A stretch of DNA of 53,243 nucleotides, the filler included, from Sluysia triapertura (Eukaryota): the NCBI GenBank assembly GCA_046118255.1. It is 4 parts of 4 records of this genome, joined end to end, with 100 filler letters (N's around TTAATTAATTAA, not from the genome) between each part and the next. Parts side by side here need not be neighbours in the genome. Positions count along the whole stretch, not along the records: positions 1 to 13,701 come from JBJNIA010024065.1; 3 more parts are not named here. One strand, 5' to 3'. Made by a program: the position numbers and the translations under genes. Positions 508 through 13,551 of this stretch are shown one piece after another. The notes under the pieces are model-generated. The model saw only the letters and a list, made by a program, of their open reading frames with translations. It did not search any database and had not been told where the DNA came from. The stretch's first letter is position 1, and each line of letters starts with the position of its first letter.

Positions 508-3074
508 TCAGAAAGGCATTATATAATTATTAGGTACTTTCCTGCATAATCTTCTAGAAAAAGATGTAAATACTTTAAAAATTACAGTTTCATAAAATAA
601 TAAAAGTATAACAAAACATAAATCAAGCAGAATATAAAGCTATATACATAAAGTTGCAATTTTTTCTTCTCTGGGTTTTATTTGTTGAATAACTGAATAA
701 TAATTACCATTGACAATTTTGACGCATTTCATCCATCGCGTAATGAATCAATAATTTTTCGTTTTTTGATAAATCATCACTACTTTCTTCAGTAGTTTCT
801 GAATCATATTCACACATCTGAAACACGAATCAACCTTCGTTTTTGATTATTTTGAAATATCAAAAGTCGGCTTTTTTTGAATACATTTCTCTGGACACAA
901 TCGATCGTAAAGTGACTGTGTTAGAAAAGAATTTTCTATAACTTCAATTTAATTTCTGAAAGACAAAATAAGGAAATGTGCGTAGACCATGTTGTTGCCT
1001 TAAACACTCTTCACAGAAAGTAGAATGCATTTTTTACGGGTTTTATTAGGTAGCTTTTTAGTATTTTAATTGGAAGTACAGTAAACTTATGAGTAAAAGA
1101 GAACAGTCATTTAAGAGACTAGAAATTTCATTATTATAATATTTTATTGTTTTTTAAAGTTATTTTGGAGTTTTGTAATTTGTATTATTTGTATGTTATA
1201 TATTTGGTTTGAAGTTTGAATTGTATTAAAGTGTGATGTTTTGTTAGTGAAAAGTTTAAGTAAATATCGTTCTTTATTATTATTATTATTATGCAAAAAT
1301 AATAACATTAATTTCTATAAATATAAAAATATTTTCTTATAAATTTAGTACTCGAAGAAAACATTAGGCAAGAAATTGCAAAAAAATAAATATCAATTTA
1401 ACAATTAGAACGAGAAAATACTATTTGGATCAATAATTAGTATTGTTAAAATATTAATAATTAAAATACTAATTTTTTGATAAAATTAAATCAATTTATA
1501 TTATAGAATTTTAAATTTATTATTTTAGAAAATATAAATGTATGTTAAAACATGTTTTTGTCTACTTTTTCTTGTCGCATTATTAACAAAGTAGATTTCA
1601 CAAAATTTTCACTCCTTATACCATTCTATTTTTAATGTAGGCATTGTGAAAAGTTAAAATTTATTGAATAATTATTTACTAAATATTATTTATTAAATCA
1701 GTTTTTAAAAAAAATGATAATTAAAAAAATTTGCTTGAACATTATTTATTTTGCTTTAGATCGTGCATTATATACCGAACACAAATAAACTTTATAATCA
1801 GCGCAAAAATATTAAATCTAATTTTCAATATTTAATATTATAAAAATATTTTTAAAATTTAAACAAAACAATAAATATATAATTTTGTGAATTAAAAAAA
1901 ATGAAAATCAATTGCATAATTAATTTTATGTACAATTTTCTATTTAATATTTTAAAATAAATTTTAATAACAGAAGTTGTTTTCATAATTTTGAATCATT
2001 ATTTCTCAGAAAATATTTTATTGAATAATCATAATTATAATAATAATAATAATAATAATAGTAATTAATATGGAGTGAATTTTATTTAGTAGTAAAACAA
2101 TTTTCATTAATTTATTTAGACCAGGCTTGACCAGTCCGAATTGTTGAACGAAAACTCGTAAACTTTCAAATTTTATGAAATTGCCACTGAAAATACTTTT
2201 AAAAACTTCAAATAATATTCTTACATCTACAAACTGACATTCAACGTAAGTAGAAAATATCTCTCGCTCATTTATATCATTACTATTTGGAAACATCTAA
2301 TCTCAATAATTAGGTACTTGAAGAGTAAACTTCACATTAAGATTTTCCATTTTATAGTTACGGACACGCCCTCAAAATTATTCGCTGTCGGTTAAGAATA
2401 GCAATTTAATAATTGTATATCGGATTATATGTTTATAATGATTATATCAGAAAACAATTAGAGAAAATGAAAATATCGAAAACAAAACGTGGTGTGCAGA
2501 TGATGAAGATTACACTGGGAACTTAATGGAATGTAATCAGTATTTTTAAATTATGAGCTTCTGCAATTGTTCAGCATAAAAAAACAATTAATTAAAATTT
2601 GATAGAAAATATACACTAGGTATGTCGTAGTGATTTTTCCACTTGAAAACTTCAAATTGTATGGTTTAGTTTTGTCATAAATATTCTAATTATTTTAAAG
2701 TCATTTTATGATATATAATACAATTATTAAAATTAATTAGCATAATAAATAATTTTTTTAATTTAAAACTCAAATATTATTTAGTTAAAAAGTTAGAGCA
2801 AAAAGTCAACATTAATTAAAGTGAATAAAATTTAATAAATATATCACAAAATTAATAGAAGAGGATGATTAAAAAAGAACTTCTGATTCGTAAACAACTA
2901 TCTTATAAAAATAAGGGCATAAAATTTAAGAATTAAATGGGAATGATCTATTTATGTGGACAAAAAAAATAAAAAGTGAGACAAATTTAAGTAAGAAATA
3001 TAATTTTACGAACATGTCAACGATATAACAATTTTCAAAATAAACATTCAAGATACAATTTAATATTTTTGGTT

Positions 3075-3308
3075 TCATTCTTGCTGAATACTTTGTCCTA
3101 GGTTTTTTTATCATAAACTGCATTCTTTAGAACTCCCCACAGAAACAAATCAGACAGTGGCCGATCCGGGGATCTGGCAAACCATTCGATTGGTCTTCGG
3201 CGTCAAATCCAACGTCCAGGAAATGTTTCATCAAGCCATTTGTTGAACAGCTTTGGTGTAGTGTGCAGATCTCCATCTTGTTGAAAATGAAGATCACCGA
3301 AATGGAGG
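3075..3308 (-). mobile_element. decayed Tc1/mariner-superfamily transposase fragment (C-terminal catalytic region)
   Basis: Minus strand reads, across frameshifts and a stop, LHFQQDG..AHYTKAV..WLDETFPGRWI*RR..EWFARSPDRPLSDLFLWGVLKNAVYDKKPRT; this matches the FQQDGAxxH / FPxRWIGR / WPxRSPDLxPxDFFLWGxLK motif series. Confidence 0.85.
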
Positions 3309-6300
3309 AACATATAAATAAATATAAGTATATTAACCATATGATAAAGCTTTTTAAGTGATATTATTTAATAAGTTAAGATATGTATGTTTTAAGTTGT
3401 ACGAATTTCATTTTACTTTAGAAGATTATAGAAGATTATAGAAAATTTTGACTGTTACCTGATTAAATCATATAGGAGAGCGCACTCCCACCAATTACAG
3501 TAATTTGCTAAATAGTTTAAGAAATTTCATATATGTAAGGGTTCGTAAGAATTAGGGCGCATAAAATATTTCGTTCAAAATTATTAAAGTTATGTTATTA
3601 ACCGAAGGAACTTATAGGTGAATTAAATGTCACGTCGAAGTAGAAAATTAAATTAATAATACAAATTATTTATAACAATCAGTTTATAAAATAAATTAAT
3701 AATTCATGGAAATTATGAAATTAATAATTGAAAAATAAAAATTACTAATGATAATAACAAATAAAGACAAAAACTAATTATCATATTAATATTAATGATA
3801 TATATAAAAGTCAAATAAATATTGATAATAATAATAACAGTAACAATAATGATAAGAATTGTAATAGACGTTAAACAAATAAATCACGTACAACAAGAAA
3901 TATGGTAATGGGACAGTGTCATTGATTTCTGATATTTTTTAATAGCATAATAAATTCTGGAAATATATTTTATGGTATAAAAATAATAAAGTACATTTGA
4001 TAATTAAATTAATTAAAATACGTTTTGATGTGATACTTTTAGAAAAACTGTTCATTGAAATAAAGGTGTTGCAGTATATCATTAATAGAAAAACGGAAGT
4101 TTTGTGATTTAAATTAACGGAAATGAATAAATGAATAAACTAGATACACATAAAACGAATCCTGATATTTATTGAATCTAAAAGTACGATGCATTGAAAA
4201 TGATTTTTATTAAGTTATTAAAATGAGAGAAAATCATATAAAGATTAAGTTGATAGCTTTATGAAGAATTAAAAGAAACCTATTTAGTTAAATTAATCGT
4301 TTTTAGAAGATTGGGAATTTGGCAAGGCTTATCAGATCCAATCTAATTTGGTTTGATTAATGAGTGTCAGTTTCGTGCCACAAAGGAATTGGGATTGTCT
4401 TTTATTTTTGATTATGGATAGAATTACACGAAATTATTGGAATCATGAACCAAGAATTATATTTCGTCTAAAGACATTGAACAGAAAGCCTTGAGTTGAA
4501 TTCGAGTTACGTTATTGGAAGATAAAAGTTTGTTATTACTTCGTTTTACATTTTTTTGTTTGTTATAGTTGCACTGGTAAACTACTCATATTTTAAACTA
4601 AATCTAGCCGAGTAATTTATAATTTATTTTGATAAATTTATTTTGCTTCATATGAACTCTACACCTCCACATCATTGAATATCAGTTATATTTTAGTAAC
4701 ATAATTACAAAATTTGTACATTTAAATTTAAATCAAGAAAATTAAATCGTTTTATGATAAAAATAAAGAAAAAAACACTGACAAATTTTATTACTAATTG
4801 AAAAAGAAAAACATGTTAAAAAGGTTTTAGTACCAATAAAAATAAATAATTTAAACTACCAATTATAATTTAACAATTTGAATCTAAATTAGCATTATTT
4901 TGTTCGAGATTTTAAAAATTAGAATTAGCAATATGAAAATATTTTTAGTTATAATATTTTGTCTTTGTATTTTTGAACATTATGATATGGTTAGTGTTGG
5001 ATTATTGTTGAAAGTTTTAATTTTTGTTTATTTTGTTTAGTATGTAACTAAGTATATATAAATTATGGTTTTTAAAATAATGTACTGATTTTGTGTTAAA
5101 AAATAATTTAATACGAGCTTAAACATGTATAGAATGAAGAATTATTTCAGGATTTTATTATAATGCGATATGTTGAAATTATATTGTTCATATTACAATA
5201 CAATTAATAATAATAAATAATTAATATACGATATAATAAATAATTATTTTATTAAATACAAGATGATTATAGAATAATTTTGTTTAATCATTTGAGTACT
5301 ACGAAGACATCTATATATTCAGAGATGTAAGCTCATTGTGACTTATCGACATTTGGTGGTGTAAGAGAGTGTATTATGATTTATCATTTATGCCTTAAGT
5401 AAAATACTTTGGTTATACAATGAGCTTTTTCGTATCGAAAGAATTAAAGTTAGATTTAAATTCCTTTTCGATTTTTTTAAAATTATATTTCCGAATTTAT
5501 TTTACTTTTTTAATAAATGAATAATAATTTAAATTAATTATTAAATTGATAATAATGTGTAAAGAAGATATATTGATTAAATTAATTAAATTAAATTAAA
5601 TTAATTTTATTTTACTTTAAAGAAGAAAATCTCAAAAAATTATCAATTTCGTCAAAAAGATTTTAAAAGATTTCAATAGAATTTATAGTAAAATTATTTC
5701 GAGTTTATTGAATGAAAAGTTTAGATTTGCATTGTTTTAGTTATGACCGATATAATTAAACAAAAAAGAGAATTTTACGTTTCTATTACCAAAACTAATT
5801 CGACTTTTCTTTATAAAAAATAATGTTTAATTTTTAATATTAATACAAATGACAGAAAATTGAATTTTAATTTAAACATTTGTATAAATAATTTGTAAAA
5901 TTAAATTTAATGTTTTAATAAATTATTAATTTATTTGTAGAGTTAAATCATTGAGAATGGATAATATTCTTGTTGATTTAATATATCAATCACAGTTATA
6001 AAAGGAATCAATATTATGCGTAATAATATTTTTCGTGAAGCAAGATTTAATGTTAAAAAATAGGAAAATGTGCACAAATTTAGATATAAAAAAGAGTTAA
6101 TTGAAACAATCAAATATTTTTAAACAAATATTATGCAAACAATTTCAAAATGGATCGACGGTTTATTATAATACAGATTGTGATGGGTTTGCAGGTGTCA
6201 GCGGTGATTCAGAGTGACATGTTGAACACCGTTCACGATAAGTTAAAGTATGTTGCGTTCTACAGTAACATGCTAAAGAGAAATAAAGAGTTGATTATGA

Positions 6301-6719
6301 TGTGGTAAAAACAATTTAGAGACAAGAAATAAAATGAAATAGTTAAGAAACACTTTGCTTCTTATAAGAAAGTGTTTTATAAGTAAAGAAAGCTGCTTCA
6401 ACATTTTGTAATAAACATTGTAATTGAATTTTGATCTTCGACAACTGATTGTGATATTTTTATCTCTATTGTTGTGAATAGTTAGGCCACGTTTTTGTTA
6501 GATTTATTTATCTAAAAACGGAAATTAACATTTTGAATGTTGTATCAATCCTGGATTGTGAATATTGTATTTTTGTTGATTGATAATTTTTATTTATTCT
6601 GTGATTATTAAAAATATATCGATATTTCAGACTAATTTAATTTTGTTATTGAGTTATGGTTAATATGGTATTAATAATTCAAATTAACTAAAATATAATA
6701 CAATAATTTTTATAACAAC

Positions 6720-6767
<48 letters not shown>
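6720..6767. repeat. (AAT)n microsatellite
   Basis: About 16 perfect units. Confidence 0.95.
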
Positions 6768-6768
<1 letters not shown>

Positions 6769-7186
6769 TCAAATTATAATGAAGGAATAAAAATAGATTA
6801 TTTTATATTTAATTTAACAAAGGTTTTAAGAATTTATAATCAAAGATTTACGTTATTTTTGATTATTAATTCATTTAATGCTTAAATTTATTTATAAAAA
6901 CATTACGAAAACAAATGAAATTGATTTTAAAAGGTTTTCAGTCATCAAATTTTATAAAAAGAAATCATATACATTGTTTTTCTAAAAATAATAGTAAAAT
7001 ACTCGATGGCTTTATTTTCAAAATTGGAGAACTTTAATCATAAAAACTTTTATAAACGGTAAAGTCTGTTATAAACGAAAAAATATTGTTAATAATATAT
7101 CAATGTTCCTTTTAATTATTATTTCTTTGTAAGTTAGATTATTAATGAATATAGAACGTGTATTTATAAAATATATATTATTCTAG

Positions 7187-7309
7187 ACAGCAGTATCATT
7201 AAGAGACTATTCCAGAAATGATATACCATCATTAAATCGATTTATACGCAGAATTCGTCGTCAAAAGGAGCGCGATCCATGTTTCTGGACTCCTATTAGT
7301 TGTATCTAA
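7187..7309 (+). CDS. AstC: terminal exon of an allatostatin-C / somatostatin-type neuropeptide precursor; predicted mature peptide QKERDPCFWTPISCI
   Basis: After ttctag it reads TAVSLRDYSRNDIPSLNRFIRRIRR-QKERDPCFWTPISCI-TAA: RxRR convertase site, N-terminal Gln, Cys7/Cys14 ring and PISC-hydrophobe-stop, the same 15-residue register as insect AstC pEVRFRQCYFNPISCF. The signal-peptide exon and exact acceptor were not established. Confidence 0.8.
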   Translation, partial: TAVSLRDYSRNDIPSLNRFIRRIRRQKERDPCFWTPISCI

Positions 7310-7382
7310 GCAACAGTGATGTAAAACATCAATTTTCAATTTAAAAAATAAATTTTAAATCAATTTCAATTTGTTATTATTA

Positions 7383-7386
<4 letters not shown>

Positions 7387-7429
<43 letters not shown>
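7387..7429. repeat. (ATT)n microsatellite
   Basis: About 14 units. Confidence 0.95.
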
Positions 7430-8969: not shown

Positions 8970-10260
8970 TTAAACTACGAAAGGAAAAACGAACTTTAAT
9001 ATCATTACTATATGACCCAGAGTAGATGGTCGTTTACAGTCAAATATTCGAATATTTTTCATAAAAATGCGCTTGGTGTCTAAAAAATAAACATAACTTA
9101 TGGACTTTGACAACAAGATTGGCGCGAAAATGATTAACATCAAGATATAATTTCGGAGAATAATATTATTTAATTTTAAAATAGGTTTGTATACAAATAT
9201 TCGTGGAATATTGGAATTGTGCGTAAAATTCATTTGAACAAACATCATTTTGTTGTTGGGTAAGTGAAATGATAGAATATTCGAGCCTGGAGCTACCGAC
9301 CTATAGTGAAGGTCATCGTATAAATCATAAGCGATAATTATAGTATTGTTATTTAAATAATTTTGTATTTGCACTATTTCGTCTATGTGGATAAATTATA
9401 ACCGGAAATGCGATAACTGTAGAGAATTCATGGAAGACAAAAGGCTTGGTCCTAATCTTATGATTTTGTACCAATAATACTTTCGAATTGTATTTTGGTT
9501 CATACTCGAATATCATGGTTAAATTAATGATAAATATTTGATATTCGAAAAGATCATTACAGAATAATCCATGGATAAACTTGTTTCATAACTAAAGATT
9601 CAATTCGGTACCAATTTACCATACGACACTGCATGGTAAGAATAATTAGATTGGCTTCGTTTATACGTATTATTGCAAGTATTTCTCTTTGGTTGTCATT
9701 CATGGTTATAAAACTCTTCATTTTTAAGTACGCTGACGATATGTATGCATCAGAGATGCATTACAAACAAAAATATTCTAACATCATCTAAAGGATGAAT
9801 AATTTTCTGCAGCATATCTGTAAGTTGGAGGTAGTGTGGGTAGTATTCGCTGTGGTGATGCATAATACAAAAGATGTGAGATTGAATTGTGGTCATTGTC
9901 GTCATTATCAGAATGAAAACATGGATAATTACATTTATTCCAAACAATAACTATAGCAAGTTCAATGACGATTAATATTAATGTTTAAATTAATGTTAAA
10001 TCATTTCTCGTGTCTTTTAGTGAGAAATGTGGATGTAAATCATGAGATGTAAATCCGTGCAGTAACTTGTCGTTCACCACTGGTTAAAAAATCAGAACAG
10101 GTAGCGAGTGGATTTTCCAAATTATTGATATAATGTTCATGTACTACTTTAGGCAAATAAATCGGTCTTGCATATTTTTATCCAACATTTTCTCTTTTAT
10201 TTCTGTATCCAAATTAGAAAGTTCAAAATATTCAGATCTATAAACTTATTTATCACAATT
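8970..10260 (-). pseudogene. degraded coding-like region of unknown origin
   Basis: Higher GC than flanks with broken minus-strand ORFs (8970-9374, 9750-9947); no family recognised. Confidence 0.25.
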
Positions 10261-13350: not shown

Positions 13351-13551
13351 CTTAATTATGTTGAAAATGGTGAAGCTGAAATGATTCGATTAAATAGTCA
13401 AGTAGTTCGATTAACACAAGAAAATAAGTGGCGACGAGATGAATTAACTGGAATTCAAAATAGATTAGAATGCAGTGAAAATAACAAAATCCAATTGGAA
13501 GAAGAAAATAAACATTTGGAGTTTATTCAAGAAATGCGTCAATGCTATTGA
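13351..13551 (+). pseudogene. KLC: kinesin light chain N-terminal heptad-repeat fragment (isolated exon or pseudogene)
   Basis: LNYVENGEAEMIRLNSQVVRLTQENKWRRDELTGIQNRLECSENNKIQLEEENKHLEFIQEMRQ matches the KLC pattern LRAQVRRLxQENxWLRDELAxTQQKLQxSEQxVAQLEEEKKHLEFM; ends in TGA with no consensus donor. Confidence 0.7.

What the first reader, a model, noticed from the sequence alone, without database searches (positions are those of the whole stretch)
7187..7309. Hidden allatostatin-C-type neuropeptide with a somatostatin-like FW in the ring
Seen: RIRR-QKERDPCFWTPISCI-stop, below the ORF-track cutoff. Established: insect AstC is pEVRFRQCYFNPISCF, and AstC and somatostatin systems are orthologous; somatostatin/urotensin II rings contain FWK. 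This peptide keeps the AstC ring size and PISC but has FW-T where insects have YF-N. Inference: a likely unannotated neuropeptide informative for AstC/somatostatin evolution in a compact-genome animal.
Basis: partly seen in the sequence, partly recalled or inferred. Interest (0 to 1): 0.7.

Follow-up and report, generated by a model that had tools for sequence, protein, structure and literature searches.

The report
Flatworm allatostatin-C-like neuropeptide gene
A small, single-copy, apparently two-exon gene in a very AT-rich flatworm genome (sequenced together with fish DNA) probably encodes a secreted, disulphide-looped peptide of the allatostatin-C type, which I did not find reported from flatworms in the papers I could search; there is no RNA or cross-species evidence yet.

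Summary
Window 7187-7309 (+) reads TAVSLRDYSRNDIPSLNRFIRRIRR-QKERDPCFWTPISCI-stop. The predicted 15-residue peptide has the length and cysteine positions I recall for insect AstC (from memory).

Evidence that it is a gene:
- The core pattern occurs once in the 619-Mb assembly and never in the reversed-pattern control.
- It lies in one of the window's few GC islands and is single copy.
- About 1 kb upstream on the same strand, in a second GC island, starts the window's only non-trivial signal-peptide-like ORF (ATG 6150).
- Several donor/acceptor pairs join the two pieces in frame. All give the same signal peptide and the same mature peptide.

The organism is a flatworm, not an arthropod and not compact:
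- Its mitochondrial code reads AAA as Asn.
- Its somatostatin-receptor-like GPCR is closest to Schmidtea GCR320.
- Fish DNA contaminates the assembly.
- The genome holds two somatostatin/opioid-type receptors.

The "somatostatin-like FW" reading is weak. There is no WK motif, and the loop has six residues, which is AstC-type. AstC and somatostatin are now argued to be paralogous or distinct families.

Still missing are RNA evidence, conservation in relatives, and the loop Asn that most AstC peptides carry. Verdict: a probable new member of a known family, confidence about 0.55.

The parts
6150..6264 (+). Candidate exon 1. The ATG at 6150 has A at -3 and G at +4 and is the first in-frame ATG after the TGA at 6102-6104. 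It encodes the signal-peptide-like MDRRFIIIQIVMGLQVSA followed by the start of the propeptide. The 3' end is uncertain: possible donors follow 6194, 6203, 6247 or 6264.
   Evidence: ORF list and sequence. It is the only non-trivial signal-peptide-like ORF start in all six frames of the window. GC island, 38-43% GC. Single copy at about 13x. In-frame joins to exon 2 were enumerated.
6265..7186 (+). Intron, boundaries uncertain by up to about 70 nt at the 5' end and 30 nt at the 3' end. It holds a high-copy repeat at about 6548-6709 and an (ATA)n microsatellite at 6712-6767.
   Evidence: 19% GC. Contig depth rises to about 10,260 at 6602-6655 against a baseline of 13. Tandem repeat.
7187..7309 (+). 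Terminal coding exon (propeptide, cleavage sites, peptide, stop). The 5' end is one of 7187, 7191, 7194, 7204, 7206 or 7216, depending on the acceptor used.
   Evidence: Translation. Acceptor candidates. GC island. Only one copy in the genome.
7247..7261 (+). RRIRR: two dibasic (RR) prohormone-convertase-type cleavage sites directly before the peptide.
   Evidence: Translation. That cleavage happens here is inferred from general knowledge of prohormone processing.
7262..7306 (+). Predicted mature peptide QKERDPCFWTPISCI, 15 residues. Cys7-Cys14 would form the disulphide around a six-residue loop FWTPIS. The N-terminal Gln could cyclise to pyroGlu. A shorter form, DPCFWTPISCI, would arise if the precursor is also cut after KER.
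   Evidence: Translation. The core pattern is unique in the genome. Processing is inferred.
7347..7352 (+). AATAAA, 38 nt after the stop codon: a possible polyadenylation signal. This is weak evidence because the hexamer is common in DNA this AT-rich.
   Evidence: Sequence.

Best explanation
This is a real, single-copy, small gene of an AT-rich flatworm, apparently with two coding exons. It encodes a short prepropeptide of about 55-77 residues.

Inferred steps:
1. Exon 1 supplies a cleavable signal peptide (MDRRFIIIQIVMGLQVSA) and the start of a propeptide.
2. The terminal exon supplies the rest of the propeptide, the dibasic sites RR-I-RR, and a C-terminal 15-residue peptide, QKERDPCFWTPISCI.
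3. After convertase cleavage the peptide would form a Cys7-Cys14 disulphide around a six-residue loop. Its N-terminal Gln would probably cyclise.
4. It would act as an allatostatin-C-type neuropeptide or hormone on a somatostatin-receptor-type GPCR. Candidates in the same genome are G000:C181239 (L040) and its paralogue G000:C201380 (L052).

What is shown: the sequence, its uniqueness, the compositional islands, the single-copy state, the upstream signal-peptide-like ORF, the in-frame splice options, and the presence of the receptors. What is inferred: transcription, the exact splice, processing, the disulphide, and the receptor pairing.
For: 1. The peptide follows the AstC plan described in PMC9048919, PMC8851493 and PMC8514136. 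It sits at the C-terminal end of the precursor. One peptide is made per precursor. It has two Cys with exactly six residues between them, and the first loop residue is aromatic. It has an aromatic-X-Pro motif followed by Ile. PISC is part of the insect PISCF motif. Its 15 residues fall in the 13-15-residue range reported for molluscs.
2. The core pattern occurs once in 619 Mb, with 0 control hits.
3. Both exons coincide with GC islands, which make up 2.3% of the window.
4. The only non-trivial signal-peptide-like ORF start in the six frames of the window lies 1 kb upstream on the same strand.
5. Thirty donor/acceptor pairs join the two pieces in frame. They include the canonical-looking pair AAA|GTATGT ... 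CTATTCCAG|A. All that retain most of the signal peptide give the same mature peptide.
6. Both exons are single copy and error-free in 13x contigs, so this is not a transposon.
7. No RNA family or tRNA explains the GC islands.
8. The same AT-rich genome encodes an intronless GPCR whose best solved relatives are SSTR2/1/5/4/3 (198-160 bits, against 156 for opioid receptors). Its closest named relative is planarian GCR320. A paralogue is of nociceptin/SSTR type.
9. Short precursors are normal for flatworm prohormones; Smed-npy-8, for example, has 76 residues.
Against: - No RNA run holds the locus, so transcription and splicing are unproven.
- No homologue was found. The word search was limited to proteins of 22-70 aa. 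The exhaustive phmmer search gave only two spurious repetitive hits. The ESM Atlas gave nothing and Pfam gave nothing. A 40-residue query has little power here.
- Most AstC peptides have Asn in the loop; this one has Thr.
- In the lophotrochozoan AstC peptides described so far, the loop Pro is replaced by V/L/I and the first loop residue is aliphatic. An arthropod-like loop in a flatworm is therefore unexpected.
- AstC-type peptides were not mentioned for flatworms in any paper I could search, and motif searches of the planarian prohormone catalogue found nothing similar.
- The finding was picked by eye from a very large scan, so some selection effect applies.
- My signal-peptide criterion was written after I had seen the candidate.
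Confidence: 0.55

Rival explanations
1. Chance. A short open frame in AT-rich non-coding DNA happens to spell an AstC-like motif, and the upstream ORF is unrelated.
For: The loose loop pattern is common in this genome: 292 hits against 217 for the control. My rough estimate for the fuller pattern is about 0.4 chance hits per genome, so one hit is not significant on its own. No RNA evidence or homologue exists.
Against: Several independent features coincide: the dibasic sites, the Gln start, the register and length that I recall for insect AstC, a 40-codon open frame in 23%-GC DNA, two GC islands, the only signal-peptide-like ORF of the window on the same strand within 1 kb, in-frame canonical splice sites, and a matching receptor type in the genome.
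Confidence: 0.22
2. A real secreted-peptide gene that is not homologous to AstC: a lineage-specific flatworm prohormone, or another small disulphide-looped secreted peptide, that converged on a C-x6-C C-terminus.
For: By my recollection of Koziol et al. 2016 (not held here), most flatworm neuropeptide families show little similarity to those of other bilaterians. AstC peptides have 'no strictly conserved motif', so assignment from 15 residues alone is weak. The common loop Asn is missing, and the loop differs from other spiralian AstCs.
Against: Six of the 15 positions are identical to insect AstC (sequence recalled from memory), including Pro-Ile-Ser-Cys. Length, register and terminal position also match. 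Somatostatin-receptor-type GPCRs without a known ligand exist in the same genome.
Confidence: 0.15
3. A member of the somatostatin/urotensin-II-related (SSRP-like) family rather than of AstC. This is the strong form of the reader's 'somatostatin-like FW' idea.
For: C-F-W opens the loop, as I recall it does in urotensin II and somatostatin (from memory). SSRP-like peptides occur in several spiralian phyla, and their receptors are also SSTR-like. The genome has two SSTR/opioid-type receptors.
Against: The defining WK motif is absent (W is followed by T). The loop has six residues, not the four of protostome SSRP-like peptides. There is no C-terminal extension. The preferred residue before W in protostomes is aliphatic.
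Confidence: 0.04
4. Contaminating DNA from an arthropod (for example a parasitic crustacean) that carries an ordinary AstC gene.
For: The loop with Pro-Ile-Ser-Cys and an aromatic first residue is arthropod-like. The assembly demonstrably contains foreign DNA from fish and bacteria.
Against: The only animal COX1 types found are fish and one AT-rich lineage using the flatworm code, plus its nuclear copies. The arthropod cuticle domain PF00379 gave no hit, though that search had no positive control. The contig's 23% GC matches the contigs that carry flatworm GPCRs at 22-29%.
Confidence: 0.03

Closest known systems
Arthropod allatostatin-C (PISCF-type; Manduca and Drosophila AstC)
   Same: A single peptide at the C-terminal end of a small precursor, behind a dibasic site. 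By my recollection of the insect sequence, it also shares 15 residues, an N-terminal Gln and Cys at positions 7 and 14. The loop has six residues and opens with an aromatic pair. It has the aromatic-X-Pro-Ile-Ser-Cys motif and one hydrophobic residue after the second Cys.
   Different: FW-T replaces YF-N, so the common loop Asn is missing. The C-terminus is Ile, not Phe. The N-terminal half (KERDP) is unrelated. The host is a flatworm. Ecdysozoan genes have an extra phase-2 intron, whereas the intron phase here is unknown.
Lophotrochozoan AstC-like peptides (molluscs, annelids, nemerteans, brachiopods)
   Same: They come from the same superphylum. Each precursor yields a single peptide of 13-15 residues with two Cys around a six-residue loop. 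The genes are often missed by gene predictors.
   Different: In those peptides the first loop residue is aliphatic and the Pro is replaced by V/L/I. The flatworm peptide keeps an aromatic residue and Pro-Ile.
Protostome SSRP-like peptides, urotensin II and somatostatin
   Same: A disulphide-looped peptide near the C-terminus of its precursor, with Trp in the loop and receptors of the SSTR-like group.
   Different: There is no WK motif. The loop has six residues, not four (protostome SSRP-like, UII) or 10-15 (SS). There are no N- or C-terminal extensions.
Echinoderm SS1 (ASTC-type) peptides
   Same: They share the Phe-X-Pro motif, sometimes followed by Ile.
   Different: Their loop has 10 residues, and they come from deuterostomes.
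Flatworm prohormones (planarian npp/spp/npy genes)
   Same: Very short precursors with a signal peptide and dibasic sites, for example the 76-residue Smed-npy-8.
   Different: Motif searches of the planarian catalogue supplement found no peptide with a comparable C-terminal Cys loop. These were motif searches only, not a full read of the file.

Membership tests
Allatostatin-C-type neuropeptide precursors | A single bioactive peptide at the C-terminal end of the precursor, preceded by a basic cleavage site | tested here: met
   RRIRR lies directly before a 15-residue peptide that ends at the stop codon. Criterion taken.
Allatostatin-C-type neuropeptide precursors | Two Cys enclosing a loop of exactly six residues (invariant in protostomes) | tested here: met
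   C-FWTPIS-C. Criterion from PMC9048919.
Allatostatin-C-type neuropeptide precursors | Aromatic/Phe-X-Pro motif in the loop, often followed by Ile; first loop residue aromatic (ecdysozoans) or aliphatic (molluscs, annelids) | tested here: met
   The loop has W-T-P-I and its first residue is F. This is the ecdysozoan/echinoderm form, not the form described for other spiralians.
Allatostatin-C-type neuropeptide precursors | Asn within the loop (present in most, not all, members) | tested here: not met
   Thr stands where Asn is usual (criterion). The source describes this as common, not strictly conserved.
Allatostatin-C-type neuropeptide precursors | N-terminal signal peptide on the same transcript | tested here: inconclusive
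   A signal-peptide-like ORF lies 1 kb upstream on the same strand and can be spliced in frame. No transcript is available and no dedicated signal-peptide predictor was on hand.
Allatostatin-C-type neuropeptide precursors | [quoted passage not shown] | tested here: inconclusive
   Phase-0 joins exist (6194 or 6203 to 7187). Phase-1 (6264 to 7191) and phase-2 (6247 to 7216) joins look as good or better. RNA is needed to decide.
Allatostatin-C-type neuropeptide precursors | Detectable sequence relationship of the precursor to known members (clustering or BLAST) | tested here: not met
   No true homologue was found at E<=0.001 among 1.84 billion representatives. The word search was blank. The query is only 40 residues, so power is low.
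Allatostatin-C-type neuropeptide precursors | Cognate AstC/somatostatin-type GPCR in the same genome | tested here: met
   For L040 (G000:C181239) the best solved relatives are SSTR1-5, with a 40-bit margin over opioid receptors. Its paralogue is L052. This rests on best hits only, with no phylogeny, and the pairing is untested.
Allatostatin-C-type neuropeptide precursors | Expression in neurons or endocrine cells, and the mature cyclised peptide detected | not testable with these tools
   No RNA run of this organism is available.
SSRP-like / urotensin-II / somatostatin family | Trp-Lys (WK) motif inside the Cys loop | tested here: not met
   The loop is FWTPIS, with no Lys. Criterion.
SSRP-like / urotensin-II / somatostatin family | Four-residue loop with N- and C-terminal extensions (protostome members) | tested here: not met
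   The loop has six residues and the peptide ends one residue after the second Cys (criterion).

The most novel reading that the evidence does not exclude
Flatworms, thought to have lost many bilaterian neuropeptide families, retain an allatostatin-C-type ligand. Its loop keeps the aromatic-X-Pro-Ile form shared by ecdysozoan AstC and echinoderm SS1 rather than the derived form of molluscs and annelids. That would imply the Pro-containing loop is ancestral for the family. It would also give the first candidate ligand for the orphan flatworm somatostatin-receptor-like GPCRs (the planarian GCR320 group), here in a probable fish parasite.
Probability: 0.45. Interest if true: 0.6.

Novelty: new member of a known kind. 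Interest (0 to 1): 0.5.

Why it matters
If real, the gene would add flatworms to the taxa that carry AstC. It would also add a spiralian data point with an arthropod/echinoderm-like loop to the current debate on how the AstC and somatostatin-related families are related (PMC8851493, PMC9048919).

It offers a testable ligand for orphan somatostatin-receptor-like GPCRs of flatworms. These receptors are of practical interest because peptide GPCRs are discussed as anthelmintic targets (PMC6114109).

It is also an example of a short neuropeptide gene that ordinary gene prediction misses, as was reported for mussel AstC genes.

It does not bear on a 'compact genome', and it does not show any special link to somatostatin.

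Tried and rejected
Laying that run confirmed only the DNA sequence and copy number.
- Homologue searches on the 40-residue exon: the word search was blank; Pfam was blank; the ESM Atlas was blank. The exhaustive phmmer search gave two hits, both long repetitive proteins matched by repeated short motifs. I rejected them as chance.
- Paralogues: a protein search of the worm's own genome found only the locus itself. A pattern for CxFNxx[ST]CF was swamped by a repeat family and AT-rich noise.
- Arthropod hypothesis: the cuticle domain PF00379 gave no hit but had no positive control. The hypothesis was rejected on the mitochondrial code and the planarian affinity of the receptor.
- The strong donor GTG|GTAAAA after 6304 was rejected, because every phase-2 acceptor gives TGA. 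No bridging internal exon was found.
- The GC islands are not RNA genes.
- L044 and L037 were examined as receptor candidates and rejected as galanin/AstA-type. L032 is PrRP/NPY-type.
- Splice-site calibration from a multi-exon worm gene failed: L062 turned out to be a frameshifted, intronless copy.
- Literature: two key flatworm neuropeptide papers (Koziol 2016, McVeigh 2009) are not held. What I say of them is from memory.
Joined frames were only printed in a script to check reading frames.

Full report
**1. The observation**

Window 7187-7309 on the + strand translates to TAVSLRDYSRNDIPSLNRFIRRIRRQKERDPCFWTPISCI followed by TAA. The frame opens immediately after TAG at 7184-7186, which is both an in-frame stop and a possible AG acceptor.

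The predicted product behind the RR-I-RR sites is QKERDPCFWTPISCI. Set beside them, the peptide has the same length (15). It has the same N-terminal Gln, Cys at positions 7 and 14, the Pro-Ile-Ser-Cys block, and one hydrophobic residue before the stop. The PISCF motif and the single-peptide precursor are confirmed by PMC8514136.

**2. Is it more than chance?**

- The window is extremely AT-rich, 22.9% GC.
- The bare loop pattern is common in the 619-Mb assembly: 292 hits against 217 for the reversed control.
- The fuller pattern requires C, F/Y, a T-D-B codon, x, P, I, a WSN codon, C, a codon with T in second place, then TRR. It occurs once, at this site, and never in the controls.
- From base composition I estimate about 0.4 chance hits per genome for that pattern alone. 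Uniqueness by itself is therefore not proof.
- Weight comes from coincident, largely independent features.
  - The exon is a GC and CpG island: 37% GC against 19% in the intron, and only 2.3% of 115-nt windows reach 37%.
  - The 40-codon open frame is itself unlikely in such DNA.
  - Two dibasic sites precede the peptide.
  - The locus is single copy: a genome protein search finds only itself, and contig depth is about 13x with zero differences.
- No Rfam family or tRNA explains the islands.

**3. The rest of the gene**

- About 1 kb upstream on the same strand, a second GC island (6122-6309) contains an ORF that starts at ATG 6150.
- That ATG has A at -3 and G at +4, and it is the first in-frame ATG after the TGA at 6102-6104.
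- The ORF begins MDRRFIIIQIVMGLQVSA|VIQ. It has a basic n-region, a 10-residue hydrophobic core, and V-S-A at positions -3 to -1.
- A generic signal-peptide filter run on all six frames of the window returned only this ORF and a microsatellite artefact. I wrote that filter after seeing the candidate.
- Enumerating GT donors in the ORF and AG acceptors at the terminal exon gives 30 in-frame joins. The most plausible are:
  - AAA|GTATGT (exon 1 ends at 6247) with CTATTCCAG|A (exon 2 starts at 7216): phase 2, 63 aa.
  - CAG|GTGTCA or GCG|GTGATT with TTCTAG|A (7187): phase 0, 55 or 58 aa.
  - ACA|GTAACA with ACAG|C (7191): phase 1, 77 aa.
- The strongest-looking donor, GTG|GTAAAA after 6304, yields TGA with every compatible acceptor, and no bridging exon exists.
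- These models keep the same signal peptide and the same mature peptide, so the functional reading does not depend on which is right. The intron phase does depend on it.
- The intron carries a very high-copy repeat, with depth up to about 10,260 at 6602-6655, and an (ATA)n microsatellite.
- An AATAAA lies 38 nt after the stop. This is weak evidence in DNA of this composition.

**4. Whose genome?**

- G000 has 619 Mb in 263,945 contigs, and this contig is only 13.7 kb.
- A COX1 search found three fish-type copies at 46% GC and about 97% amino-acid identity to one another. It also found one divergent copy at 23% GC, two nuclear-looking copies of that one, and bacterial fragments.
- In the AT-rich COX1, AAA codons sit where Asn is conserved (6 of 14 aligned, including the GGFGNW and PRMNN motifs). 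ATA aligns with Ile and TGA with Trp. This is the flatworm/echinoderm mitochondrial code.
- Thirty rhodopsin-type GPCR loci are mostly 22-29% GC, like the window.
- The closest named relative of one of these GPCRs is Schmidtea mediterranea GCR320, at 49% identity over 94% of the query.
- The arthropod cuticle domain gave no hit (no positive control).
- I conclude that the window belongs to a rhabditophoran flatworm sequenced together with fish DNA, most simply a fish parasite. That last step is inference.

**5. Receptor**

- The worm contig G000:C181239 carries an intronless 381-427-codon ORF (L040). Its CDS is 41% GC, with flanks of 19% and 29%.
- Its best solved relatives are somatostatin receptors 2, 1, 5, 4 and 3, at 198-160 bits. 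The next family is the opioid receptors at 156 bits.
- A paralogue at 37% identity (G000:C201380, L052) is of nociceptin/somatostatin-receptor type.
- Two other receptors (L037, L044) are galanin/AstA-type, and L032 is PrRP/NPY-type.
- A receptor of the right superfamily therefore exists. Best hits cannot say whether it belongs to the AstC-receptor clade or to the SSRP-like-receptor clade, and the pairing is untested.

**6. Comparison with what is known**

- PMC9048919 states several features of protostome AstC.
  - The loop always has six residues.
  - Most members carry Asn in the loop, and many carry F-x-P.
  - The first loop residue is aromatic in arthropods and nematodes and aliphatic in molluscs and annelids.
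- The same paper says SSRP-like peptides are defined by WK in a four-residue loop with extended ends.
- PMC8851493 adds two points. F-x-P, often followed by Ile, is shared by arthropod and C. elegans AstC and echinoderm SS1. In lophotrochozoan AstC the Pro is replaced by V/L/I.
- The worm peptide meets the loop size, position, aromatic-X-Pro-Ile and single-peptide criteria. It fails the common-Asn feature and shows no detectable precursor-level similarity.
- It fails both defining features of the SSRP-like family. The 'somatostatin-like FW' is therefore best read as a conservative variant of the aromatic pair.
- The premise that AstC and somatostatin are orthologues is outdated (PMC8851493, PMC9048919).
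- I found no report of an AstC-type peptide in flatworms in the papers I could search.
- Motif searches of the planarian prohormone catalogue supplement were blank.
- The abstract of Koziol et al. 2016, as I recall it from memory, lists no AstC among conserved flatworm families. That paper is not held.

**7. What is missing**

- No RNA run holds the locus.
- Homologue searches with the 40-residue exon were blank or spurious, and they have little power for such a short query. The word search also saw only proteins of 22-70 residues.
- No relatives' genomes are on hand.

**8. Verdict**

- My estimates are:
  - a real AstC-type gene: 0.55
  - a chance motif: 0.22
  - a real but non-homologous looped secreted peptide: 0.15
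  - an SSRP-like peptide: 0.04
  - arthropod contamination: 0.03
- Novelty: a new member of a known kind. The family is not reported from this phylum in the papers I could search, and the loop form is unexpected for a spiralian.
- Interest: 0.5. It is worth a cheap RT-PCR and a search of other flatworm genomes, but it remains a single-species in-silico prediction.

Noticed in passing
G000 contigs C219470, C200653, C192378, C197277 (L015-L017, L021); C243991 (L018); C37458 and C90747 (L019, L023); C77565, C10703, C159863, C72926 (L020, L022, L024, L025): The assembly is mixed. It holds several fish-type COX1 sequences (46-48% GC, about 97% amino-acid identity to one another). It holds one AT-rich flatworm-code COX1 and two degraded nuclear-looking copies of that gene with stops. 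It also holds bacterial COX1 fragments.
   Followed up: partly
window 13351-13548 (+): A kinesin-light-chain-like coiled-coil exon (recognised from memory; Pfam gave no hit) starts after a TAG acceptor and ends in TGA with no nearby GT donor. The genome holds about 10 dispersed copies at 44-89% identity, several with internal stops, so this looks like a duplicated fragment or pseudogene family. C204485 has the longest open copy.
   Followed up: partly
window about 6548-6709: A short, very high-copy repeat lies inside the putative intron. Contig depth reaches about 10,260 against a baseline of 13, with many contigs ending there. (ATA)n at 6712-6767 lies beside the repeat; (TTA)n at 7374-7429 lies downstream of the stop codon, so the two microsatellites lie on either side of the terminal exon.
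   Followed up: no
window 3060-3340 (-): A GC island carries two overlapping reverse-strand ORFs with motifs that I read as a decayed Tc1/mariner-type transposase (FQQDG..., ...FPGRWI...). Pfam gave no hit, so this rests on my reading alone.
   Followed up: partly
window 9200-10124 (both strands): A further cluster of GC islands carries several 50-134-codon ORFs on both strands. There is no significant Pfam match, only weak sub-threshold zinc-ribbon-like hits for 9795-9947 (+). Its nature is unknown.
   Followed up: partly
G000:C181239 (L040), C201380 (L052), C256099 (L037), C202627 (L044), C83355 (L032): The worm has many intronless rhodopsin-type GPCR genes. Five were typed by best solved relative: two somatostatin/opioid-type, two galanin/AstA-type (44% identical to each other), and one PrRP/NPY-type. 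C240771 (L062) looks like a frameshifted copy of the galanin/AstA-type pair.
   Followed up: partly
P0001, P0002: The only 'significant' hits of the exhaustive protein search are long repetitive proteins. One carries repeated ...RRGRCHDPCFTTPTHENC... units and the other repeated ...FWTPISSC... units. Repeats inflate their scores, which is a caution for short-peptide queries.
   Followed up: yes
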